Of a stretch of 64,000 nt of DNA, positions 24,201 to 57,930 are shown piece after piece. Within the stretch, counting starts at the first letter, position 1; every line of letters begins with the position of its first letter. The DNA is taken from NCBI RefSeq assembly GCF_016432865.1, contig NC_067403.1, positions 264,058,001 to 264,122,000 on the forward strand. Reading direction: 5' to 3'. The notes below the pieces were generated by a model. The model made no database searches. It worked only from the letters and a program-made list of their open reading frames with translations, and was not told the origin of the DNA. The translations under genes and the position numbers were made by a program. This DNA comes from Antechinus flavipes (taxonomy: Eukaryota).

Positions 24201-27200
24201 AAGTGAGAGGAGAGGGGCAAGAGAGACATGCAAGAGGGACGTGCTAAAGTGCCCTCGGGTGTTTCATTAGTTCCTCTCAACCAGCCTGCGGGGCAGATGC
24301 TATTATTTCCATTTTGCAGTCAAAGAAACTGAGGCTAAAAGAGTTGCCTGGAGGGTTGGAGGCTAGGTTTGAACTCCTGGGCTCCAGGCCCAGGGCTGCA
24401 GGAGGGATGGCATCCCTGTGGAGGGCCAAGAAAGCCCAGGGATGGAAAAGGGGCCTTGGGAGTGGGCAGCAGGGATTTCAGTGGGTCTGATGAGGTCAGA
24501 GGCCGAGAGAAGAAAATGGAGGCAGCTCTTGGAGGGATGCTGAACAACAAGTGGGGACTGAGGGATGGGGGGGGGGGAACCCGGATGAGCAAGGCCGTGA
24601 GCCAGCCTCTCGGGAGAGAAAGGAGGAGCTGGATCCAGAGCGGTCCTGGGGGTGCCCCCCTCCCACTATGGCGGCCCTAGGGGTGTCCCCCGACTACGGC
24701 TTTGACAAACCCCCTCCTTAACTTCATCTGAGGATCTCTTACTTGGAGCTCCCCCTTCTCAAAGCCCCCCTTGTCCAGGAACCTAAAGGAGTGGGAGCAG
24801 TTCCATTTGCAGAGGTGAGTGGGGGGCCAGCCGCCGGGAAGGGGCCTCCTGGGAGAGACCGGCTGCCTCCTCCTGGCCCTGGAAGCTCACCTTCCCTGCT
24901 TCTGGGCCTCTCCCCCTGCCACCACCGGGCCAGGTCGTGCCTGCCAATTACGGGTGGCCCACAGGGCCCTGGCTCGAGCTCCCCCCCAGTGCCATCCACT
25001 CCGGCAAGTCAGACACCCTCTCCCCATCTCCTTTCCTTCCCTCCCTACCCCCCTGCCATGACCAGTGCTACCCATCAGCTCCCCTCAAAGGCTGCTTCCT
25101 CTGTCCCTGTTCCTTCTCCCAGCTCTGCCCGGAGCTCACCCACCGTGTCCCCAACCGCTCCTGGAGGGGGCTCTGACTGGCCCCCCTGCTTCTGGCCCCA
25201 CGCCCAGCCTCACTCTGAGCCAGCCCTCTCCGCTGTGAACATTCTGCCTCCCTTCCTCCCCGGACCCTAGTGCCTTCCCCTTGCCTCCCAACAAAGCTCG
25301 GTTTCCAGTCCTTTACTGCTCCTTCCTTCAGCCTTCTTGTACTCGATCCTCCTCCCCGCCCCCAACTCTGCCATCCAGGTGCCCTGGCTTTCCACTCTAG
25401 CTGAAAGCTGGCATACAGTAGGTGCTCAATCAATGCTGATGGACTGGTCTTGAAGAGAATGCTCCATCTTTATCTCTGATCATCCCTCATTCCTGGACCG
25501 CCCTCGCTCCTCCCACCTGCTTCCTAGTTCCCTGTTACCTCTCCTGGGCCCCCTCCCAAACCCCCACCCATGACCTTTCCCCTTCTCTTCCCTTCCTCTG
25601 TCCCAGTGAACTATGGCCCCAGGGGCTCCTGGTGAGCCTGACCCGGGAGGGGCTTGCTCGGTGTTGCCAACGGCCTGCCTGCAGCAGTGCTCCCCCTGCT
25701 CCTTTGGCCCTGCTATGAGGACTTGCGGAGGTGGGGGGTGGCCGGGGGGCTCCGGCCCACTTCCCCTCCCCCTCCTGTTGCATGCAGCCTCAGTCTCCCT
25801 TTGAAGTCCCTGCCCCAGGCAGCCCTCCCCCCCCCCCCGCCTCCCCAGGCAGGACCCCCAGAGCCAGGAATGGGCTGCCAGGACTGCAGGGGCGGGTGGG
25901 GGGGCTCCAGCTGGGCCAGTCCATGCTCTCCCCCGCCGCTAGTTAGTGACTCCCCCCGCCCCAGGCAGCCCCGGGTACCCCTCGTGCAGCGTGTTCAGCC
26001 GCTCCATGTACTGGGCCACAATGTCCACAGCCTCAGCCTCGGCCAGCTGCAGGTTCCCAGACACGTTGCACCGAAGGTCGTTCCAGTCCGAGCGCAGCAG
26101 CTCGAAGTCCATGGCCCCCACGCTGAACGTGCGCTGCCAGTTGATGGCCTCCTCAGGCCAGGAGCCCCGGGGCGGGGCCGCCTCCTCCTCCTCGCTGTCC
26201 TGGGACGTGGCCGTCTCCTCGGGACCGGCCTCTGCTCCCTCCGCCCCAAGCTTCCCCCCCGCAGGCCCGGCCTGCGCCACCTCGGACACGTGAAGGAAGG
26301 AGGTGACGGGCTCGCCCCGCTCTGAGGAGGCGTTGGAGGCCGGGCCGGGGAGCCCGGTGGTCGGGTCCAGGGCCCCCTGAGTGAGGCTGCCTCTGGAGGT
26401 CCTCCTGAGGGAATTCCCAGGCCCCGGGGGCCGGGCCGGGGAGGCGCCGACCGTGGGAACTCGATGCCCCGGAGGCCGGCGAGGAGCCCGCAGATGCACC
26501 CTCTGAAGGGGCCGGGGGTAGAGGAAAATGCCAGGCAGTGGGGGCTGCCAGGGGCCGCGGGCGAGCCAGGGCCGGGGCCGTGGGGGCCGCGTCCGGGAGG
26601 GCCGGTGCTGCCCGCGGTGCACCCTCGTCACGTACACTTTCTCTGGCTTCTTTGGGGACCGTGGGGCAGGAGGCCTGGGGGGCGGCGCCCGTCCCAGGAA
26701 GAGGGAGGTCGCCAAGGCTCCCTCGGGACCTTGGGGGGTGACTGAAGCCGGCTGGGCCCAGCTGAGGGCGCGGGTGAGCCGGGGCTCCCGCCTTGGGCGG
26801 GGGTCGGGGCTGCTGTCCTTGGTCCCTTGGGGGTCCCGAGTGCCCCAGGGGGGAGAGGTGGTCCTGCTGGGGGAGGGCTGGGCTCCTGTGGGCTCTGGGC
26901 TGTCCGCTTCCTCTTCTTCCTCTTCCTCCTCCAAGAAACCTGGGGAGAAGGGACAGCTGCTCAAGGAACTGCCTGCGGGCAGGGGGAATTAGGAGGCTCT
27001 GGCCGGGGGCACTCACTGTCTGGGTCGAGGAACAGGAAAGCTCCACGCCCAACCCCCTCCTCATCCCCGTCGTCTTCGTCGTCCATCTTCATGTATTTGT
27101 AAAACCCAAACCTGGGGAGGCAGGGAGGCTGGACTAAGAAACGCCTCCCCTCCTCCCCTGGCCGCCTGAGGTAAGCAATTCTGGCAGGACCTGGGCACTG

Positions 27201-30200
27201 CCCCCTCTGCCCCCCCAGCCCTGCTCGGGCCCCATGGGCACTGCCCCCTCTGCCCCCCCAGCCCTGCTTGGGCCCCATGGGCACTGCCCCCTCTGCCCCC
27301 CCAGCCCTGCTCGGGCCCCATGGGCACTGCCCCCTCTGCCCCCCCAGCCCTGCTTGGGCCCCATGGGCACTGCCCCCTTTGCCTCCCAGCCCTGCTTGGG
27401 CCCCTTGGGCACCACCTTTCCAGGTACAGTGGAGACTCCCGGTAGAAGCACTTGTTACTAGTTTCCATATGTGTGAGTCGGGTGAAGTCATTGGGGTACA
27501 CAAAGGAGAGATAGACCTGGAGGCGAGGGTCCCAAAGGTTAGAGGTCACAGGTTAGAGGCAGGACCTCCTTTAGGAATCTGGGGGCAAGGTAGAGGTCAC
27601 TTACGAACTGCAGGCCCTGGTAGCGGGCGATGGGGAAGTCCTTGACCACGTAGGTGGGGGCGTAAGCACAGGGCACCAGCACGTTCTCCAGACGGGATGG
27701 CTCCAGCCTGGGCGCTGGGGGCGGGAGGGAGGGGGAAGGGTCAGCGACCTGCCCCAGCCACTGTCCTCCGGCCCCTCCGGCCCGTCTCCCCCCCCCTCAC
27801 TGAGGAAAAAGGTGTCCCGGGCATCCGGCCTCAGCATGTCTGCCCCGAGCTCCTTGGGCTGTGGCCCCAGCTTGGCCACGTGGCTGGCCAGGGACTGGGG
27901 GATGTGGGTCACGTGATCCATCTTCAGGGATGACTCATCTGGGGGGAGAGAGGACCCCTGAAGTCACCTCCTCCCAGGGGCCGCCCTCTGCCCTCTGCCC
28001 TCGGATGGGCCCGCTGCCCCCGACTTCTCACACCTGTGTAGAGGGAGATGTGGGAGGAGCCGATGACCTCGAACTTCAGGCCGGGCAGGAACACTCGCCA
28101 CTGGGGAGGGAGGGAGGACATGTTAGAGGCCAGGGCGGAGCTTCAGGGGGGCCGGGGGCTGCCCCGCTCCGGCCCCAACCGGGGGGCTCAGGACTCACCC
28201 CCACTTCCACGTGGTCAGATCCCCGGTCATCCTGCTTGTGCAGCAGCTCAAAGTAATAGCGTCGGGAAGAGGAGAGCCTGGGAGGGAGAACCAGAGGGGC
28301 GCTGGGTGGGGAGACTGGGGAAGGGGGGGCCTGCTTCCCAATGGGGGGAGATGGGGAAGGAGACACTGGGGGGCCTGCCCCCAAGGGGGAGAGGGGGACA
28401 CTGAGGATCCTGCTTCCCAAAGGGGTGGCAGACGGGGGAGAGAGAGACTTGGGGTCCTGCCTCCCAAGGGGGAGGGGGGAGAATGAGGGTCCCGCCTCCC
28501 CAAAGGGGGTCTGGGATATATTCATTTAGGAAGAATCCCTGGGGCTTGAACCCTCAGATACAAGGGCCAGGGCTCCCCCACTGTGTCTGGGCCCAGGGGG
28601 TTTTGGCTGGGATCCCCGGGGAGCCCACCGAGCTCTCACCGCTTGGGCTTGGACACCTGGGAGCTGAACTTGGTGAATTCCCCGGGTGCTGTCCACTCGG
28701 AGCCGGTCTAGAGTGAGGAATATGAGGGGAGCGCGTGACGTGGGCCCCTTGTCACCCCATAAGTAGCCTGGAGGTGGAGGGAGACCCTGAGACAGCTCCG
28801 GGAGGGCCCCTCCCCACCAGCTCGTGGCTTGCCGTGGCCTTGACAGGAAGTCACTGGCCACTGTTTGGGACCCTCTGGCTGCAGGAGCTCCCTCCTCCCT
28901 CATAACAGGAGCCAGTGGGGGCCTGCTGGGCCCTCTTGCCCTCCCTGGCCTGGCTCCTGAGTCTGCCCTCTCCCCTGCGGGCACAAACCTCCCTCTCTGA
29001 GGGTCCTCCCTGCAGCCCCTAGCCATTAGTTCTCTGGGCTGAAGGAGCCCTTTCCTTCATGGGAGGCCTGGGGAGCCTCATTTCAGAGGGAAGACCCTGC
29101 GACTTCCCCCACGTGCTTAGCCCGCTTCTCAGCTTTTCTCCATCTGCATGGACAGCACGTGGGGGAAGTCGCAGGGTCTTCCCTCTGAAATGAGGCTCCT
29201 GCTTCCCAAAGGGGTGGCAGACGGGGGAGAGAGAGACTTGGGATCCTGCCTCCCAAGGGGGAGGGGGGAGAATGAGGGTCCCGCCTCCCCAAAGAGGGTC
29301 TGGGGTATATTCATTTAGGAAGAATCCTTGGGGCTTAGCCCTAGAATCCAGCTCTTGGGCCTTGGACCTTCCCATCCTGGCCTGGAGAAACTGGTTGTTC
29401 CCTCTCTTCCAATGCCTGGGGCTCTCCTGGGAGGGTCTCTAAGGCCCCTTGGATCCAGGTGTTGGCTGAGCACGGGGCCTGCGGGCACAGGGCCGGCCTG
29501 GGCCTCCTGGGCCCTATCTTCCTCACCCCAGCCCCCTTACTGCCCCAGGCCCAACTTCTCAGGGGTGGTCTCTGCCTTGGGGTCGGCCCCGCCCCAGCTG
29601 TCTCTGCTTCTGGCTGAGAAGCAGGCTAAGCAGAGAGCCCTGGGCCCATCGCTGGAGACCCCCAGCCCCGGCGGGGGGTCCTGGGCATACCTTGCCTACG
29701 TAGGCCACCAGCTGGGCACCTGCTGGGCTCTCATCGGGGCTCAGCCAGAACTCTGAGTTATCATCGGAGGCCACAGAGAACTGGACGTCACCTGAGGACC
29801 AGGCAGGGGCCACGCTCTAGCACCATGGCGGAGCCCCCCACGGGTGATCCCGTGGCCTCCTCCCTGCGCCCCCTCCCTGGACCTCGCCCCCATACCGTCT
29901 CTGCTGGGGTGGATGTAGCCGAAGATGCGCAGACCGTAATTCTTCCACTTAGGCGACACGGCCAGTTTCTTCACTGTCGTGCGGCTCTGGGCAGGGACGA
30001 TGGGGCAGCCCATGACCTCCTGACCCCAGGACCCTCTCTGGGCATGCGGCCCTTCTGATGTCTGGGAGCCCTGACCCTCCTTTCCCTTCACCCCCTGCCT
30101 AATGTCCCCTGGGCCTCCCAGCGTCCCCTGATCCCTCCAAGCTCCATCCACAGCCTCCCCTGATATCTCCTTGGCTCCTGGTCTCCCCCTCCAATTCTCT

Positions 30201-33200
30201 CTTCCCCTTCGACCGTGGCCCTCGGGCTCCCCCAGGTCCCCAGGCTCCCCCGTCCGCTGCCCCTCCTCTGCCCCGCCAGGGGCACACTCACATGGGGAAA
30301 CAGTGGGAAATGAAGGTTCCTCCTCAGGCTCCCCACAGTGCCTCCACACCAGTCCTCAAACACGTGCAGGTTGACCTTCCCCCTGTACTGTGTGTGCAAG
30401 AGGCCCATTGCCCTGTGACCCTGCGGTGGGAGCCTGGCTGTCACCGGCCCCCGCGAGCCCTCACTGCCCTCGGGCACTCACCTCCTCCTGCCATGGGGGG
30501 ACCTGGCGGGTGAGGTTCGGAGGGGATGGCCGTCCGCCCTGTCCAGGGAAGGTGCTCAGCTCCCGCCCGTCGGCCTGCAGGAGAGAGTGTGACTCAGGTG
30601 TGGAGAGCACAGGGGTGGGGGGGCGCGGGGTGCCCACATCGTGGGGGCCCTTACCAGCTGCTCCTCCTCACGGCTCTCGCTGGAGTCTTCCACCCTCTTG
30701 GGGGGAGACACGACCTGGGATCCTCCCGCCCCCTTCCCGGCGTCCGTGACCTCACTCAGCTTTTCTCCATCTGCATGGGCAGCACGTGGGGGAAGTTGCA
30801 GGGTCTTCCCTCTGAAATGAGGCTCCCCAGGCCTCCCATGGCCCAGCGGCCTCCCCTGGCCCAGAGGCCTCCCCTGGCCCAGAGGCCTCCCCTGGCCCAG
30901 AAGCCTCCCCTGGCCCAGAGGCCTCCCCTGGCCCAGAAGCCTCCCCTGGCCCAGAAGCCTCCCCTGGCCCAGAGGCCTCCCCTGGCCCAGAAGCCTCCCC
31001 TGGCCCAGAAGCCTCCCCTGGCCCAGAGGCCTCCCCTGGCCCAGTGGCCTCCCCTGGCCCAGTGGCCTCCCCTGGCCCAGAGGCCTCCCCTGGCCCAGAA
31101 GCCTCCCCTGGCCCAGTGGCCTCCCCTGGCCCAGTGGCCTCCCACCTAGGCCAGGGCCCACTGCCCCCAGCATGGAGCTGCCCTGTCAGGGAACAAGTTG
31201 GTGGGGAAGGAGGGGAGAGGTGCCCGCGCTATCCTGGGGGGCCTGCAAGGCATGGGCCTAGGGCTCATAGCCCAAGAAGGAAGGTTCTTGTGTCCCAGGG
31301 TTAGCTCATGTGGATGGCTAGCTAGTGTGGACGGGCCAGCAGGAGGGCCCATCTGAAAGCCGGGATGGGCTGCCGGGCCCCATTGGGCTAACTGCTCCTG
31401 GTGCCCCCCAGTGCCAAACCTGGAACCTCCAACTGGGCGCCCCCCCCACCTGCCATGAGCTGGCCGGGCTGGCCAAAGGAGCAACCTCTCAGCAAGTGAG
31501 GCTGTAGGCTGGACCCCTCTGCAGACCAGGGAAGCTGCCTCCAAGCTCCCCCAACGGGCAGCTCCAGCCTCCTCCCTGTTCTGGGCCCGCAGGACCCCAC
31601 CTCTCTCCTGCAGTGAGCTCGGAACTGAGCTTCCAGACTCCCCTCCATCTCGCACAGCGCACTGGTGCCCTCCCTGGGTCCCGCAGGCCAAAACGCACAC
31701 TCCTAATCCTGGCATTCAAAGCCCCCGCCAGTTGCCTCTCCTTCCTCCACGTGCCCCAACCCCTCTCCAGGGCCAGCGGCCAGTGCGTCCCTTCCCGGCC
31801 CGATGGGAGGGGAGGTCCACGGGGGATGGAAGGAGCTGCCCGGCTCTGGCGCTCCCACTCCGCACACCCGGGCTTGGTTTCCGGAGTCCGGAGCGGATGC
31901 TGAGGTTTCCACTTCCCCATACGGGGAGAACTCTTGCTCTAATACACCTCCTCCCTTTACCCCGGGGCTGCGACCTCCCAAGGAGCCAGGTTCCCTGCTA
32001 GAGGAAGGGGGGGTGGCTTTCCCTTTGGGGAAGGGGAAAAACCCTTAGGGGCCCCCTTGTCAGAGGCTGTCCCCTGCTTGCTGCCCCCTACTCTGGTCAC
32101 TTTCTCACCCTCTTCAGTCCATCAGCCACCAAAATTCTCTTCCTAAAGCAGAATGCTCTCCTCCAACCTTCCGTGGCTCCCTATGGCCACTGGCCCGAGG
32201 CAGCTTCACACTCCTGCACCTTAATCCTCCCCGCAGGTCTCAACTACTCACTTTCCCCAAGCCTGCCTCACAGCATGCTCCCCCGCCCCTGCCCGGGGCC
32301 TAGTGCTAACCCTAATCCTAACGGTGCAGCTCCTGTTCCAGCTTGGCTGGACTCCCTCTCCGTGTTTGATCGCATTTGCTTCCCCTGTGACATTCTGTGG
32401 GAACAGTCCTAGCCTGGAAGACCTTGGGCAGGGATCGGTACTAGTAGGGAAGTCCTGGGGGGAGATGGGAGGTGGTGGAAGGGGGGCGGGGGGAACGGGG
32501 CACGTACAGCCCCAGCCTCTGGCAGGAAATCTGAGCAGGGGGCGGTGGAGGAGGAACAGCCCTGGAATCTGAGTGGACAGGGTCTAGATCCTTCTGCGGA
32601 ATCCCTTCCCGTTCTGGGAGTCCCCCCGCCCCCGGCCCTGCCCTCACGGGACACGGAGCCTCAGTTTCCAATACACAGTCCCGAGGAGACAAGATGCCGC
32701 GGGAGGATGCTGAGTCCCAGGTGCGCTGGCACACCCCAGGTTTGGGACCCCTGACACCCAACCCAGAAGACAAACTCCAGGATGCGGGACGGAATCCGGG
32801 TCTTTAACCTGCCCCCCATCAACAGCCCTATCGGACCCAGGGGGCGCCGGCCCTAGAAGGAGGTGCCGGTGCTTTGGAGCATCTTCTGATAAAAGGGCCA
32901 GGCTCCTTTTCCCCAGAACCAAGGGACGAGCCACGAAAGCCAGGGCTGACACGTGGGCAGAGGGGAAGTGAGAGACCAAGGCTGGAACTCGGACAGGCCA
33001 GTGTCCGCGGCTGGAGAGTGGGAAGCGGGGAACCACGGGTGGTCTTGGAGCAAGGCAGGGCCAATGGCCAGGACTGTGCTTTTGCTGAGTGGAGGACGGA
33101 GGATTGAGGTTTCAGGGATTGGGAACCCCAGGGCAATTTTGTCTGGAAGACCGGTCACCTGTCTCTCTCTCCCCTCCCCGCCGTCCCCCACGGAAAAGGC

Positions 33201-33666
33201 CAAACTGAAGAGGACCCTGACTGCCCCGTTGGTCTGGTGGCCAGGCCGCTCTGCCACAGGCTCCAGTGGTCCCTTCCCTGTCCTCACACTGGCCTGCCTC
33301 TGAATAACCTTTCCCCGTTACTTGCCTAGTTCTAATGGGGTGTGAGATCCTCCCACCCAGGACCCCACTGAGGGGGTCTTTCTGGCCAGGGACCTCCAGA
33401 GGTGATACTCTCAGCGGGCCGTGACCCAGCTGTTCCCTCCCAAAGGCCCCAGGGCTCTGTGGAGGAGAAAGTGAGGCAGCCGGGGGAGCTTCCCTGGGCG
33501 GGAGCCTACCTGGGCCGGAGCCTCCGCTGAGGCGCAGCCGAAGGGCTCTGCCCTGGCGCACGAGGCTCAGGTGCAGGTAGGTGAGCCACGCGGCGCAGGT
33601 GAGCAGCACCAGCAGCAGTAGCAGGCGGAACTGCTTGCGAAGCTTCTTCACTGGGAAGCGCAGCAT
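21135..33666 (-). CDS. B4GALNT4: Beta-1,4-N-acetylgalactosaminyltransferase 4, complete 20-exon CDS (1078 aa)
   Basis: Exons (minus): 33666-33510, 30770-30655, 30574-30482, 30387-30292, 29986-29896, 29791-29691, 28707-28640, 28277-28199, 28100-28034, 27938-27801, 27714-27605, 27516-27416, 27111-27017, 26939-25979, 23126-22786, 22689-22536, 22387-22315, 22198-22045, 21856-21730, 21249-21135; all GT-AG, phases join into one frame; TM anchor, PA14-type region, FLCDLH and WGGED catalytic motifs. Confidence 0.97.
21730..21856 (-). CDS. B4GALNT4: B4GALNT4 exon 19
   Basis: [41 protein letters not shown]. Confidence 0.96.
22045..22198 (-). CDS. B4GALNT4: B4GALNT4 exon 18
   Basis: [51 protein letters not shown]. 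Confidence 0.95.
22315..22387 (-). CDS. B4GALNT4: B4GALNT4 exon 17
   Basis: [24 protein letters not shown]. Confidence 0.95.
22536..22689 (-). CDS. B4GALNT4: B4GALNT4 exon 16
   Basis: [50 protein letters not shown]. Confidence 0.95.
22786..23126 (-). CDS. B4GALNT4: B4GALNT4 exon 15
   Basis: [28 protein letters not shown]...[20 protein letters not shown]. Confidence 0.95.
25979..26939 (-). CDS. B4GALNT4: B4GALNT4 exon 14 (large Pro-rich stem exon)
   Basis: FLEEEEE...RALSWA...[11 protein letters not shown]...[34 protein letters not shown]...YMERLN. Confidence 0.93.
27017..27111 (-). CDS. B4GALNT4: B4GALNT4 exon 13
   Basis: [31 protein letters not shown]. Confidence 0.93.
27192..27412. repeat. 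43-bp minisatellite x5 in B4GALNT4 intron 12
   Basis: TGGGCACTG unit starts at 27192, 27235, 27278, 27321, 27364. Confidence 0.95.
27416..27516 (-). CDS. B4GALNT4: B4GALNT4 exon 12
   Basis: [33 protein letters not shown]. Confidence 0.95.
27605..27714 (-). CDS. B4GALNT4: B4GALNT4 exon 11
   Basis: [36 protein letters not shown]; |GTAAGT donor. Confidence 0.93.
27801..27938 (-). CDS. B4GALNT4: B4GALNT4 exon 10
   Basis: [21 protein letters not shown]...[13 protein letters not shown]. Confidence 0.93.
28034..28100 (-). CDS. B4GALNT4: B4GALNT4 exon 9
   Basis: [22 protein letters not shown]. Confidence 0.95.
28199..28277 (-). CDS. B4GALNT4: B4GALNT4 exon 8
   Basis: [26 protein letters not shown]. 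Confidence 0.95.
28305..28510. repeat. Degenerate ~40-bp G-rich tandem repeat in B4GALNT4 intron 7
   Basis: Recurring CCTGC(T/C)TCCCAA(A)GGGG core. Confidence 0.6.
28640..28707 (-). CDS. B4GALNT4: B4GALNT4 exon 7
   Basis: [22 protein letters not shown]. Confidence 0.95.
29072..29199. repeat. Perfect 46-bp inverted repeat with 36-nt loop (intron 6)
   Basis: 29072-29117 is the exact reverse complement of 29154-29199. Confidence 0.97.
29197..29336. repeat. 140-bp direct duplicate of 28408-28547
   Basis: Constant offset 789 nt, 4 mismatches by hand comparison. Confidence 0.95.
29691..29791 (-). CDS. B4GALNT4: B4GALNT4 exon 6
   Basis: [34 protein letters not shown]; phase-0 donor |GTATGC. Confidence 0.95.
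29896..29986 (-). CDS. B4GALNT4: B4GALNT4 exon 5
   Basis: [30 protein letters not shown]. Confidence 0.95.
30292..30387 (-). CDS. B4GALNT4: B4GALNT4 exon 4
   Basis: [32 protein letters not shown]. Confidence 0.95.
30482..30574 (-). CDS. B4GALNT4: B4GALNT4 exon 3
   Basis: [31 protein letters not shown]; 93 nt, |GTGAGT donor. Confidence 0.88.
30655..30770 (-). CDS. B4GALNT4: B4GALNT4 exon 2
   Basis: DGEKL...[12 protein letters not shown]; CAG| acceptor, |GTAAGG donor. Confidence 0.9.
30830..31143. repeat. 18-bp minisatellite GGCCTCCCCTGGCCCAGA x17 in B4GALNT4 intron 1
   Basis: Direct tandem array with three unit variants. Confidence 0.97.
33510..33666 (-). CDS. B4GALNT4: B4GALNT4 exon 1 (cytoplasmic tail and TM anchor)
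   Basis: [43 protein letters not shown]; donor CAG|GTAGG. Confidence 0.95.
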
Positions 33667-34027
33667 GGTCAGGGGTGGGTCCCAGCCGGCCCGGCCAGGG
33701 CTCCCCGGGCCTGCCTGCCCGCCCTCCCCGCCGCCTTTCTTTCCTCCTGGTCCCGCTGTCCCTAGCTGCCTCGGTCCCCGGGCACCCCCAGCCTCATGCT
33801 CCCCGAGCCCTGGGCAGGGAAGGGGCGGGCAGGGCTGGAATGGACCAGGCTGGGCAGGGCCCGGATGGGCCGGCCGGGCAGGGATGGACTGGGCAGGGCC
33901 GGCACTCCCTCCGTCCTTCTCTCTTTCACTCCAGGGACGGCCAGGCCCGGACCCACTTCAGCGCCCACCGCCCGGGCTCCGGGCTTCGTACATTGGCCAG
34001 GGGGCCGGGGCTCCGAACCAGCGCATG

Positions 34028-34215
34028 ACCCCCTCCTCCTCCTCCTCTTTCTCCCGCCTCTTCTTCCTCCTCCTCCCCCTCCCACCTCTTCTTCCTCCTC
34101 CTCCTTCTCCCCTTCTTTCTCTTTCCTCCGGCTCCTTCTCCCCCTCTTTCTCCTCCTCCTTGTCCCCCTCCTTTCCTCCCTTCCCCCTCCTCTTCTTCCT
34201 CCTCCTCCTCCTCCT
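34028..34215. repeat. Polypyrimidine/polypurine (CT-rich) tract
   Basis: ~190 nt almost purely C/T on plus. Confidence 0.85.
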
Positions 34216-35090
34216 CTCTGTCCGCCTTTGTTCTTCGCAGCGGCCTGGGATGGGGCTTCCCAGGCGGGCCCGGCTCCGCACCCTTAGTCCGGGGGGCCCC
34301 AGCTGCTTTCTCGCCGCGGGAGCCGCGGCGGGAGCTGGACCGAGAGCAGCTGCAGCAGCGGCAGCAGCAGCGGCGGCCGCGCTGCGATGCTACCCACCGT
34401 GAAACGGGACGCGGACCGGCCGCCGGCAACCGGCCAATCATCGGTCTCTTTCTCCGGGCTAACCAACAGACGCCCAGAGGAGGCGGAGCCTTCTGGGGTT
34501 AGGCTGCACCTAGCGTTCATCTCCACGCCAACGCGCAAACATCCACCTGGCGGACGGAACTATCAACGGCCGGGCTGAGGGGGAGGTTTGGTAGCGCGGC
34601 CTCCTATCGCTCGGACCTCGTATTCCCAGAACTCGGACCTTGCCGGCGGATGGGCTATTCCCTAAATCTGTGTGGCTGCGTCCTATGTGGTAGCGAGTCT
34701 AGGAGCCGGGCGGCTAGGAATCGAAGCGAGATCTCAGCTTACCCCCTTGCCAGGGATGGTCCCTCCCCAGCGGGACTGAGGGGCGGTGGCTGCGGGCAGG
34801 AGGCGGGAGGGATGCTGAGGATGGACCAGGGAGGAGGGAGAAGGATGGAGGATGGAGGATGCTCAGAGGTACTGGCAGGCCTTTCTAAGCTCAACCAGAC
34901 CAGGAAGCCTCTGCCCGGGGATGGACCGTTCCCGCCCAGCAAGCCCGGGATCTGCTGATCGGGATTTCCATTTATGCGCGTGTATCGGCAGGAAAATCGC
35001 GGGACGATCCCCGAGCTCCATTCAGTGCCTGTGCGGGTTTGTGAGTGAGTGCGAAGGGCTCTGCGTGGATGTGTGTGTGTGTGTGGGGGG

Positions 35091-35560
35091 GGGGGGCAGA
35101 TCTGTGCGAATCTGTGTATAGATGTGCGGGTCCGTGTTTGGGGATGCAAGTCTATGTATGGGGGTGCAGATCTATGCAAGTCTGTGTGTGGATGTACAGG
35201 TCCGTGTTTGGGGATGCAAGTCTATATATGGGGGTGCAGATCTGTGCGAGTCTGTGTGTGGATGTGGTTTGGGGTGCAGGTCTATGCGAGATTGTGTGTG
35301 GATATGCGGGTCCATGTTTGGGGGTGCAGGTCTATATATAGGGGTGCAGATCTATGCGAGTCTGTGTGTAGATGTGGTTTGGGGTGCAGATTTATGCGAG
35401 TCTGTGTGGATGTGCAGGTCCGTGTTTGGGGGTTCAGGTCTATGTATGGGGGTGTAGATCTGTACTAGTGTGTGGATGTGCGAGTCTGGGTTTGGGGTGC
35501 AGGTCTATGTGATTATGTGGATATGCGGGTAGTATTTGGGGATGCTGGTCTGTGTGAGTC
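35091..35560. repeat. Degenerate GT-rich tandem repeat built of 10-bp modules (70-, 40- and 110-bp periods)
   Basis: GGGGTGCAGA/TCTATGCGAG/TCTGTGTGTG/GATGTGCAGG/TCCGTGTTTG blocks recur in 10-bp register. Confidence 0.8.

Positions 35561-36474: not shown

Positions 36475-36517
<43 letters not shown>
36475..36517. repeat. (AC)n microsatellite
   Basis: ~21 perfect units. Confidence 0.98.
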
Positions 36518-51708: not shown

Positions 51709-51898
51709 CAGGGGTCCTCAACTTTTTAAATAGGGGGCCAGTTCACTGTCTCTCAGATTGTGGAGGGCCAGACTATAGTAAAAACAAAAACTTTGTTTTG
51801 TGGGCCTTTAAATCAAGAAACTTCATAGCCCTGGGTAAGGGGGATAAACGTCCTCAGCTGCTGCATCTGGCCCGCGGGCTGTAATTTGAGGACTCCTG
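51709..51898. mobile_element. hAT MITE, OC1-type
   Basis: CAGGGGTCCTCAA...TTGAGGACTCCTG; absent at the paralogous site ~56140. Confidence 0.8.
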
Positions 51899-55627: not shown

Positions 55628-57930
55628 AGATTCTTTTTTTGTTTGCTCATTCCCCCTTTCTGCTTGGGCTTTTTGTTGGGTCTGAGCTCTGTGCATTCCT
55701 AGGAAAGGATCTGAGAGGAGCTTTTGTGACTTGGGGTCCTTCTGCAGGTTTGGGGGGTTATTGAATGTTTTCTCTTTTTTTGCTTCTGTCTCTCTTTGTC
55801 TCTTCCAGTCTCTCCTTGCCTCTCCCTGTCTCTCCCTTTTTCTTCCTCTCTCTCTCTGTTTCTGTGTCCATCTGTCTGTCTCCACAATCCAGCTTCAGAT
55901 TCTCATCATTCCACTAAAGTGTTCTCTCCACAGTTACCAAATCCAGGGGCCCATTCTCAGGCCTCCTTCTCCTTGGCCTCTTTGTAGTCTTTGTTGCTGT
56001 AATCACTCTCTTCTCCTGGACACTATTATCTCTAGGTTTTCAGTCCTGGTTCTCCTCCTCCCTTTCTGACTGTTTATTCCTCAGTCTTTTTTTTTTCTCC
56101 TGGATCCTCATCCTGGTCACACTAACTGTAGGTGTCCCACTAGGACAATTCCTTCCTTTTTTCTCTTTCTATTCTCCTTGATGTGATGAACCCATCAGCT
56201 CCCACTGATTTCATTTTCATCTCTGTCATTTAATGTCATCTTTTAAAATCCTTTTTATTAGGTTTGGGCTCTCTGCATTCCTAGGAGGGGATCTGAGAGG
56301 AGCTTTTGTGATTTGGGGGTCCTTCTGCAGGTTTTTGGGGGTTATTGGATGTTTTCTCTCTCTTTTTTTTTTTTTTTTGCATCTGTCTCTGTCTCTTCCT
56401 TGCCTCTCCCTGTCTCTCCTTCTCTCTGTCACTCCCTTTCTCTTTCTTTTTCTGTCGTGGTCTGTGTTCACTTTTCTGTCTCCCCAATCAAACTTTATAT
56501 CCTTATCATCCTTCTCTCACACATGTCCCCCACTCTGATGCAGGCCCCCATTCCCTCCTGAATTACTGCAGCAGCTGCTAGAGGGTCTGTCTGCCTCAAG
56601 CTTCCCCACTCCAATCCATCTTTCAGTTAGTCACCAAAGTGATTTCCCTAAAGCCTAGATTTGACCATGTCACTGCCTACTCCAGGGGACCTCAAACTAC
56701 GGCCTGTGGGCCAGATGCGGACATTTATCCCCTCCCCCAGGGCTATGAAGTTTATTTATTTAAAGGCCCACAAAACAAAGTTTTTGTTTTTACTATAGTC
56801 TGGCCCTCCAACAGTCTGAGAGACAGTGAACTGGCCTCCTTTTTAAAAAGTTTGAGGACCCTGGCCCTACTCAGTAAACTCCTCTGGCTCCCTGTCCTTT
56901 CCAGAAGAAAATTCAAGGCGCTTTGGTTGGTCTCCAAAGCCTTCATCCCCTGCTCCCCCACCTTTCCAGTCTTGTTATACCTTCCTCCCCAATGTGGCCT
57001 CTCGAATCCCACAACACCAGCCTGTTCACTGCTCCATCTCTTGCTTTAAGCATTGTCTCTGACCATCCCCCATTCCTAGAGTGCTCTCCCTCTTCCATTC
57101 TGATCCAGTAAACTACCCTGATTTCTTCAAGTCTCAGCTAAACTGCTACCTTTCCCAAGAAGACTTCTCCAGTGTCTCTTAATTCAGTTTTACTGTTCGT
57201 TCTGGCCCCACTTGAGGTTTTCTTGACAAAGATAAACTGGAGGGGTTTTCCATTCCCTCGTCCAGTTCTTTTTACAGATGTGGAAACTGAGGCAAACAGG
57301 GTGGAGTGATGTGTTTGGGGTCACACAGCCAGATTGGAACTCAGATAAATGAATCTGACTCTAGTTCTGTTGCTCTGTCCCCTGCTCTATCTGTTGTTTG
57401 TTCTTCATTTTTGGAGAGGACGAGTGACATCATTAGCTGATGTCTTGACTTGAAGGGACTTCATTCTCTGAATCATCTAAGCACAGGGGTCGGACAAAAG
57501 TCAAGAGGATTGCCATGGCCTGGGATGCAGCAACTGGCTTTGGTATCTTTGATGTCAGGGCTTCAGGGCCCTTGGAACAAATTGCAAATAATTCTCATCT
57601 ATCCTTTCCCCCCAGAAAAGTCTGCACTTGCTTGAGGAGTGGACACTGCTCCCCTTAGGTCTTAATCATTTCCTATTTATCCTGTCTATAGCTTGTTTGT
57701 TCATCTTTGTTTGTTGTTTTCCCCATTAGAAAGTAAGCTGCTTGAAGGCAGGTCTTTTGTTTTCCTCAGTATTCCCCATCCTTAGGCAGGACCTGGCACA
57801 TAATAAGTGCTTAATAAATGCTTGTTGACTAACCACCTGACTTAGTTCTGGACTTCAGAGACAGCTCAGCCTGGAAACTTGCAAGTCCCCAGTACTTCCA
57901 AAGCGGTCAGATCTGGGGCCAAGTCTGATC
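55628..57930 (+). repeat. Local segmental duplication, copy 2 (downstream of IFITM), with an extra internal copy of its head at ~56260-56480
   Basis: Colinear with 51222-53760; GGATCTGAGAGGAGCTTTTGTGA block occurs at ~55708 and ~56289. Confidence 0.9.
56683..56864. mobile_element. hAT MITE, OC1-type, opposite orientation, with 8-bp TSD
   Basis: CAGGGGACCTCAAACT...TTTGAGGACCCTG flanked by GCCTACTC/CCCTACTC; empty paralogous site at 52433-52440 has a single GCCTACTC. Confidence 0.85.

What the first reader, a model, noticed from the sequence alone, without database searches (positions are those of the whole stretch)
29058..30840. Mutually exclusive RNA pairing: the intron-6 arm can instead capture the real exon-2 acceptor region
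The left arm pairs either locally (46/46 with 29154-29199) or at long range with intron 1 at 30781-30840 (59/60), which starts 10 nt upstream of the true acceptor. The long-range duplex would cover the exon-2 branch/pyrimidine region, loop out exons 2-6 and free the decoy acceptor. Inverted repeats bracketing exons are the established driver of back-splicing. A docking/selector-like switch giving exon 2-6 skipping or an exon 2-6 circRNA is inference. Exons 2-6 total 497 nt, so clean skipping shifts the frame.
Basis: partly seen in the sequence, partly recalled or inferred. Interest (0 to 1): 0.75.

Follow-up and report, generated by a model that had tools for sequence, protein, structure and literature searches.

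The report
Templated fold-back insertion in B4GALNT4 intron
A small patchwork insertion in intron 6 of the B4GALNT4 gene carries a copy of the gene's own exon-2 splice acceptor, which lets the RNA pair either locally or with intron 1, but nothing shows that this changes splicing and it looks like an ordinary repair scar.

Summary
On the minus-strand B4GALNT4 gene, 29072-29117 pairs 46/46 with 29154-29199. The longer arm 29058-29117 pairs 59/60 with 30781-30840, which ends 10 nt upstream of exon 2 (start 30770). One number is wrong: exons 2-6 total 530 nt, not 497. Skipping them still shifts the frame.

The arms are by-products of a roughly 290-nt insertion (29058-29345). It is stitched from four nearby templates with microhomology at three internal joins, which is a template-switch footprint.

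Folding calculations make the two pairings real alternatives:
- The long-range duplex is stronger in isolation (-134.6 against -104.2 kcal/mol).
- It is the minimum-energy state of the 1.9-kb segment.
- A 14-nt toehold gives a path to it with a barrier of about 10 kcal/mol.
- In full context the two states differ by only about 6 kcal/mol, and the local hairpin forms first.

The intron-1 arm covers every possible branch site of exon 2. The long-range duplex should therefore block that acceptor rather than help back-splicing.

Competition between within-intron and across-intron pairing is an established principle. Earlier unchecked notes list several similar exon-bracketing inverted insertions elsewhere in this genome. 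Most likely this is a neutral or mildly harmful scar, and a working switch remains untested.

The parts
29058..29117 (-). Arm B: inverted copy of intron-1 positions 30781-30840 (piece 1 of the insertion). In the RNA it is the 3' strand of the hairpin. Its last 14 nt (29058-29071) have no partner in the 46-bp stem and can act as a toehold.
29118..29127 (-). 10-nt filler (piece 2), templated from the reverse complement of 29619-29628 in the 5' part of intron 6. It is flanked by microhomologies TGCT and CTCAGC. Together, 29114-29133 matches the reverse complement of 29613-29632 at 19/20.
   Evidence: (I8)
29128..29199 (-). Piece 3: direct copy (70/72) of 30755-30826. It contains the first 16 nt of exon 2 (29128-29143), the decoy acceptor AG (29144-29145) and arm A2 (29154-29199). 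The AG and the exon-like part lie in the 36-nt hairpin loop; the branch and pyrimidine region lies in the stem.
29191..29345 (-). Piece 4: direct copy (95-97%) of intron-7 sequence 28402-28558, joined to piece 3 through the shared TGAGGnTCC.
   Evidence: (D3)
30781..30840 (-). Arm A1 in intron 1, at -11 to -70 from exon 2. It is the source of pieces 1 and 3 and the long-range partner of arm B (59/60, with an A.C mismatch at 30797).
30655..30770 (-). Exon 2 (116 nt), with acceptor cag|ATGGAG.
29691..29791 (-). Exon 6 (101 nt), with donor AAG|gtatgc. Exons 3 (30574-30482), 4 (30420-30292) and 5 (29986-29896) lie between exons 2 and 6.
28640..28707 (-). Exon 7 (68 nt). Intron 6, which holds the insertion, is 29690-28708 (983 nt).
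28402..28558 (-). Intron-7 source of piece 4. It overlaps an 82-bp tandem repeat.
29613..29632 (-). Intron-6 5' segment (59-78 nt after the exon-6 donor). It is the source of the filler. In RNA it can pair 20/20 (one G.U, -38.4 kcal/mol) with the hairpin loop and junction at 29114-29133.
30829..31143 (.). 18-bp minisatellite (17.5 copies) abutting arm A1 in intron 1. Its units resemble the toehold partner.

Best explanation
A lineage-specific insertion of about 290 nt (29058-29345) sits in intron 6 of B4GALNT4. It was made in one event by serial template switching during replication or break repair. Four templates, all within about 0.6-1.8 kb of the insertion, were copied in turn: the intron-1/exon-2 boundary in inverted orientation, 10 nt of intron 6 in inverted orientation, the same boundary in direct orientation, and intron 7 in direct orientation. 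The joins use 4-9 nt of microhomology. Because the boundary was copied in both orientations, the insertion necessarily forms a perfect 46-bp fold-back hairpin and is also complementary to its source next to exon 2. In the pre-mRNA the local hairpin forms first, since A2 is only 36 nt from B. That hides both arm B and the branch region of the copied acceptor, so the insertion largely neutralises itself. The long-range pairing is thermodynamically competitive. In a fraction of transcripts it may invade through the 14-nt toehold before intron 1 is removed. It would then block the exon-2 acceptor and give frame-shifted, unproductive products, or at most a little circular RNA. What is shown: the sequence relations, the exon map and the computed energies. 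What is inferred: the single-event origin, the order of folding in the cell, and the lack of a selected function.
For: Four-piece architecture with microhomology at the joins (D3/D6/I1/I2/I8). The copies differ from their sources by about 3% (1/60, 1/20, 2/72, about 4/146). Two of these differences are C in the insertion where the source has T, at a CpG, so the event is old enough to be real and the sources decayed afterwards. Only three copies of the arm occur in 64 kb, so it is not a dispersed repeat. Before the toehold is transcribed the local pairing is the stronger one (-104.2 against -97.4 kcal/mol for the 46-nt versions). With all 60 nt the long-range duplex is stronger (-134.6), and the minimum-energy fold of the 1.9-kb segment pairs B with A1 at 58 of 60 positions. 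Enforcing either state changes the minimum energy by only 5.9 kcal/mol. All possible branch sites of exon 2 lie inside arm A1. No Rfam family reaches its threshold. P(no mismatch in 46 bp) is 0.16-0.40 at 2-4% divergence, so the perfect stem needs no selection. Earlier unchecked notes list many local inverted templated insertions in this genome.
Against: I obtained no reads, no sister-species sequence and no empty site, so lineage specificity, fixation and the absence of a splicing effect are all untested. The toehold path has a computed barrier of only about 10.5 kcal/mol, so naked-RNA kinetics do not exclude substantial long-range pairing. Survival of a potentially harmful arrangement for about 3% divergence fits neutrality, but it would also fit a tolerated or useful effect.
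Confidence: 0.7

Rival explanations
1. Working RNA switch. Arm B toggles between A2 and A1. The long-range state hides the exon-2 branch region, loops out exons 2-6 and frees the copied acceptor. The outcome is regulated exon 2-6 skipping (frame-shift, dose control by nonsense-mediated decay) or an exon 2-6 circular RNA of 530 nt.
For: Both pairings are real and exclusive. The long-range state is the minimum-energy state of the 1.9-kb segment and can be reached through a 14-nt toehold with a barrier of about 10.5 kcal/mol. Inverted repeats of 30-40 nt suffice for circularisation in minigenes (PMC4201285). Competition between within-intron and across-intron pairs sets circularisation efficiency (PMC4344496; PMC5052039).
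Against: There are no RNA data. The duplex covers -11 to -70, so it buries the branch and pyrimidine signals that back-splicing to exon 2 would need; the working ZKSCAN1 mini-intron lists them besides its 40-nt repeat. The local hairpin has the kinetic advantage. In context the two states differ by only about 6 kcal/mol, which is within model error. The arrangement is fully accounted for by the way the insertion arose. There are no compensatory changes. Similar exon-bracketing inverted repeats were noted repeatedly in this genome.
Confidence: 0.12
2. Assembly artefact: a fold-back chimeric read or a mis-join produced the palindromic block, and it is not in the animal's genome.
For: Fold-back chimeras are a known failure of long-read libraries (my own knowledge). 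I could not lay reads on the site.
Against: An artefact would copy its templates exactly. Here every piece differs from its source (about 3%, including CpG decay in the sources) and there are four pieces with microhomology joins. Two runs of the same organism from separate samples hold 0.94 and 0.86 of the sampled words of 28000-33999, although this is not position-specific.
Confidence: 0.06
3. The perfect 46-bp hairpin is itself the functional product, for example an intronic small-RNA precursor or an ADAR-edited double-stranded element, and the long-range match is irrelevant.
For: The hairpin is very stable (z = -13.35). There are sub-threshold resemblances to several miRNA precursor models.
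Against: All Rfam hits lie far below their gathering scores (58 against 200, 46 against 60, 41 against 63) and several are on the non-transcribed strand, as expected for any long hairpin. The sequence is a copy of a splice-site region, with no conservation or small-RNA evidence.
Confidence: 0.05

Closest known systems
Intronic complementary sequences that drive exon circularisation, with competition between within-intron and across-intron pairs (Zhang et al. 2014 model; Liang & Wilusz 2014, PMC4201285; Zhang et al. 2016, PMC5052039; reviewed in PMC4344496)
   Same: Reverse-complementary arms sit in the introns on both sides of a block of exons. A competing partner lies in the same intron. The arm length (46-60 nt) is above the 30-40 nt shown to be sufficient.
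   Different: The arms are not Alu or SINE copies but copies of the gene's own splice acceptor region. The upstream arm lies directly over the branch and pyrimidine region (-11 to -70), not beside it. No back-splice product has been observed.
Docking-site/selector-sequence competition in mutually exclusive splicing (Drosophila Dscam exon 6 cluster and similar; my own knowledge)
   Same: One sequence (B) can pair with only one of several equivalent partners, each placed just upstream of an acceptor.
   Different: In Dscam, pairing activates the adjacent exon, and the system is deeply conserved with many selectors. Here pairing would occlude the acceptor, there are only two partners, one acceptor is a non-coding copy, and the arrangement is young.
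Multi-piece templated insertions from replication-based template switching (FoSTeS/MMBIR-type complex rearrangements; my own knowledge)
   Same: Several short segments were copied from within about 2 kb, in mixed orientations, with 4-9 nt of microhomology at three internal joins and a 10-nt 'filler' that is itself templated.
   Different: Nothing essential differs. The only special feature is that one template happened to be a splice acceptor copied in both orientations.
Splice-site occlusion by local or long-range RNA structure (e.g. MAPT exon 10 stem-loop, SMN2 TSL2, conserved long-range intronic pairs; my own knowledge)
   Same: A stable helix covering splice signals is expected to reduce their use.
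   Different: Those cases have experimental support and conservation. Here the effect is only predicted.

Membership tests
Complementary-sequence-flanked circRNA locus | Reverse-complementary sequences in the introns flanking the circularised exons | tested here: met
   59/60 between 29058-29117 (intron 6) and 30781-30840 (intron 1)
Complementary-sequence-flanked circRNA locus | Branch point, pyrimidine tract and 3' splice site of the back-splice acceptor lie beside the duplex and stay accessible | tested here: not met
   The arm spans -11 to -70. The last upstream AG is at -36/-35, so every candidate branch A (-34, -27, -26, -17) is inside the duplex. [quoted passage not shown]
Complementary-sequence-flanked circRNA locus | A detected back-splice junction (here 29691->30770) | not testable with these tools
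No paper links B4GALNT4 to a circRNA in a relevant way.
Docking/selector mutually exclusive splicing | One docking sequence with alternative selector partners upstream of alternative acceptors | tested here: met
   B pairs with A2 (46/46) or A1 (59/60), and each lies 10 nt upstream of a cag acceptor
Docking/selector mutually exclusive splicing | The alternative acceptors belong to interchangeable coding exons | tested here: not met
   The copy holds only 16 nt of exon 2 and then runs into filler and arm B. By eye only weak GU sites follow it; no donor scan or score was run.
Docking/selector mutually exclusive splicing | Evolutionary conservation with covariation of the pairing | not testable with these tools
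   No related genomes could be reached. The best protein hits to the large exon are only about 50% identical. The copies are about 3% diverged and show no compensatory change.
Template-switch (FoSTeS/MMBIR-type) templated insertion | Inserted segments are copies of nearby sequence, in mixed orientation | tested here: met
   Four pieces, from 30781-30840 (inverted), 29619-29628 (inverted), 30755-30826 (direct) and 28402-28558 (direct)
Template-switch (FoSTeS/MMBIR-type) templated insertion | Microhomology at the junctions between segments | tested here: met
   TGCT, CTCAGC and TGAGGnTCC are shared by the adjoining templates
Template-switch (FoSTeS/MMBIR-type) templated insertion | An empty site in relatives or other haplotypes | not testable with these tools

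The most novel reading that the evidence does not exclude
A natural toehold-mediated strand-displacement switch in a pre-mRNA. The copied acceptor hairpin forms first. The true intron-1 arm then invades through the 14-nt toehold, at a rate set by how long intron 1 survives. This transfers occlusion from the decoy acceptor to the real exon-2 acceptor, so the output of productive B4GALNT4 mRNA (against exon 2-6 skipped or circular forms) becomes a timer of co-transcriptional splicing.
Probability: 0.06. Interest if true: 0.7.

Novelty: new member of a known kind. Interest (0 to 1): 0.3.

Why it matters
If the long-range pairing affected splicing, this would be a clean natural experiment. A single young mutation would have created a competing pair of RNA helices around a splice acceptor and its exact copy, in a gene whose relatives may lack the insertion. 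That would allow a direct test of how within-intron and across-intron pairing compete in a living animal. As it stands, it mainly documents a four-piece template-switch scar. It also shows how such scars can create splicing-relevant RNA structure as a side effect. Copying a segment in both orientations side by side makes the new inverted arm largely self-neutralising.

Tried and rejected
1. Reads. The look-up of sequencing runs gave 20 runs. I therefore have no depth, junction or presence/absence data.

2. Orthologous loci. A word search with the 349-aa open stretch of the large exon confirmed the gene name through NCBI-named hits. The best hits were only about 50% identical and none came from a close relative. 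Full-length proteins fall outside the length window of any stop-free reference I could give, and I did not type a spliced protein. No empty site could be obtained.

3. Rfam. Only sub-threshold matches to generic miRNA hairpin models, rejected as the expected behaviour of any long perfect hairpin.

4. ViennaRNA findpath. It returned an implausibly high saddle, an artefact of its search heuristic. I replaced it with an explicit toehold and branch-migration path.

5. Selection on the perfect stem. Rejected as unsupported: P(0 mismatches) is 0.16-0.40. The one site where both insertion arms differ from intron 1 is most simply CpG decay in the source.

6. Dispersed-repeat origin of the arms. Rejected: only three copies in the window, all in this gene.

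7. Literature on B4GALNT4 circRNA. Nothing relevant.
Full report
**Gene context.** The region lies in a minus-strand gene. Conceptual splicing of eight exons with canonical GT-AG borders gives one open frame, from [12 protein letters not shown]... through the PA14-type stretch ...[12 protein letters not shown]...[12 protein letters not shown].
- A word search with the large downstream exon returns proteins that NCBI names N-acetyl-beta-glucosaminyl-glycoprotein 4-beta-N-acetylgalactosaminyltransferase 1, or B4GN4. That is B4GALNT4.
- The best hits are only about 50% identical, so no close relative is in that collection.
- Earlier unchecked notes of this scan call the genome a marsupial, the yellow-footed antechinus. 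I did not verify this.
- Exon coordinates (minus strand): exon 1 coding part 33666-33510, exon 2 30770-30655, exon 3 30574-30482, exon 4 30420-30292, exon 5 29986-29896, exon 6 29791-29691, exon 7 28707-28640, exon 8 28277-28199.
- Intron 1 is 2739 nt and intron 6 is 983 nt.

**The observation.**
- 29072-29117 and 29154-29199 are 46/46 complementary with 36 nt between them.
- 29058-29117 and 30781-30840 are 59/60 complementary.
- The arm occurs three times in the window and never in 100 shuffles.
- The hairpin RNA folds at -128.7 kcal/mol, z = -13.35.
- The intron-1 arm ends at 30781, ten bases before exon 2.
- The direct copy 29128-29199 = 30755-30826 (70/72) holds the acceptor AG and the first 16 nt of exon 2. 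The AG and the exon-like part lie in the hairpin loop, and the copied branch and pyrimidine region lies in the stem.
- The one error is the exon sum. Exons 2-6 are 530 nt, not 497. Exon 1 joined to exon 7 still shifts the frame, with a stop 33 codons later.

**What the block is.** The arms belong to an insertion of about 290 nt stitched from four local templates:

| Piece | Insertion coordinates | Template | Orientation | Match |
|---|---|---|---|---|
| 1 | 29058-29117 | 30781-30840 | inverted | 59/60 |
| 2 | 29118-29127 | 29619-29628 | inverted | 19/20 counted with the shared flanks below (29114-29133 against 29613-29632) |
| 3 | 29128-29199 | 30755-30826 | direct | 70/72 |
| 4 | 29191-29345 | 28402-28558 (intron 7) | direct | 95-97% |

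- Piece 2 is a 10-nt filler flanked by shared TGCT and CTCAGC. Piece 4 joins piece 3 through the shared TGAGGnTCC.
- All templates lie within about 0.6-1.8 kb of the insertion.
- Mixed orientation, several short pieces and microhomology at each internal join are the footprint of serial template switching during replication or break repair (my own knowledge of FoSTeS/MMBIR-type events).
The filler adds a fourth piece.
- The copies differ from their sources by about 3% overall. At two sites the insertion keeps a CpG where the source now has TpG (30797 and the filler source). The event is therefore old enough to have accumulated changes, which argues against an assembly chimera.
- Both hairpin arms carry the same base at the site where intron 1 differs. 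The simplest reading is decay of the source, not a compensatory pair.
- At 2-4% divergence the chance of no mismatch in a 46-bp stem is 0.16-0.40. The perfect stem is not evidence of selection.

**Can the two pairings compete?** RNA energy calculations say they can.
- As isolated duplexes, A1:B is -134.6 kcal/mol and A2:B is -104.2 kcal/mol.
- Restricted to the 46 nt that A2 can reach, A1:B is weaker (-97.4) because of the A.C mismatch. Until the last 14 nt of B are transcribed, the local pairing wins on both energy and proximity.
- The minimum-energy fold of the whole 1.9-kb segment (30900 to 29000) pairs 58 of B's 60 bases with A1.
- When either state is enforced and the rest is allowed to refold, the difference shrinks to 5.9 kcal/mol out of about 1000. 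That is within the error of the model.
- An explicit path that first zips the 14-nt toehold and then exchanges pairs one by one has a barrier of about 10.5 kcal/mol. It then runs on a flat landscape, with a shallow rise past the mismatch.
- In the local fold part of the toehold is occupied by a 7-bp extension of the stem.
- On naked RNA the switch is therefore physically plausible, with the local hairpin forming first. Whether this happens in the nucleus, with proteins, helicases and the removal of intron 1 competing, is not known.

**What would the long-range state do?**
- Arm A1 spans -11 to -70 of the exon-2 acceptor. The last AG upstream of the acceptor is at -36/-35, so the branch site must be one of the adenosines at -34, -27, -26 or -17. 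All of these lie inside the duplex.
- The mismatch falls at -27.
- A 59-bp helix over these signals should block the acceptor. This fits exon-2 or exon 2-6 skipping, both of which shift the frame. It fits direct back-splicing onto exon 2 poorly.
- The general principle is established. Pairing within one intron competes with pairing across flanking introns and sets circularisation efficiency (PMC4344496; PMC5052039).
- The finding is at best a new instance of that principle. Its unusual points are that the arms are copies of the gene's own acceptor and that the within-intron competitor arrived in the same mutation.

**What I could not do.**
- The run search found two runs of the same organism holding 0.94 and 0.86 of the sampled words. 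It also found three related organisms at about 0.4, and only small-share RNA runs.
The cap then blocked a second call.
- There is therefore no evidence on expression, junctions, fixation or presence in relatives. No orthologous intron could be fetched.

**Base rate.** The window holds one other long inverted pair within 6 kb (51709-51842 against 56729-56863). Earlier unchecked notes list many local inverted templated insertions in this genome and several exon-bracketing inverted repeats (SRCAP, NIBAN3, SLC9A1, CDK20). If those notes hold, such arrangements are a common product of this genome's mutation spectrum. That lowers the surprise of finding one here.

**Verdict.** The most likely reading is a neutral or slightly deleterious template-switch scar whose fold-back design largely neutralises its own complementarity to the exon-2 acceptor. 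It is a new member of a known kind, of modest interest.

Noticed in passing
window 29114-29133 and 29613-29632: In RNA, the hairpin loop and junction can pair 20/20 (one G.U, -38.4 kcal/mol) with a segment 59-78 nt downstream of the exon-6 donor. This is a third possible pairing, created by the templated filler.
   Followed up: partly
window 30829-31143: An 18-bp minisatellite (AGGCCTCCCCTGGCCCAG, 17.5 copies, 95% matches) in intron 1 directly abuts the arm. Its units partly match the toehold partner, so arm B's 3' end has many weak alternative partners.
   Followed up: no
window 27192-27412 and 28330-28509: Two further tandem arrays in B4GALNT4 introns: 43 bp x 5.2 (96% matches) and 82 bp x 2.2. 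The second overlaps the source of insertion piece 4.
   Followed up: no
window 51709-51842 and 56729-56863: The only other long inverted pair in the window (about 135 nt, 85-95% complementary, about 4.9 kb apart). It is probably two copies of an interspersed repeat in opposite orientation.
   Followed up: no
window 33960-34300 (minus strand): A long purine-rich, GA/GGA-type low-complexity tract just upstream of the B4GALNT4 start codon region. It reads as poly-Glu/Gly/Arg in all frames.
   Followed up: no
window 34980-35500 (minus strand): The translations repeat with a period of about 20 residues (..HTDSHRSAPPYIDLHPQT..), which indicates a tandem array of roughly 60-bp units upstream of the gene. 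A (CA)n tract lies at 36475-36517.
   Followed up: no
They lie just downstream of exon 8 in the next intron. I left them out of all later searches.
   Followed up: no
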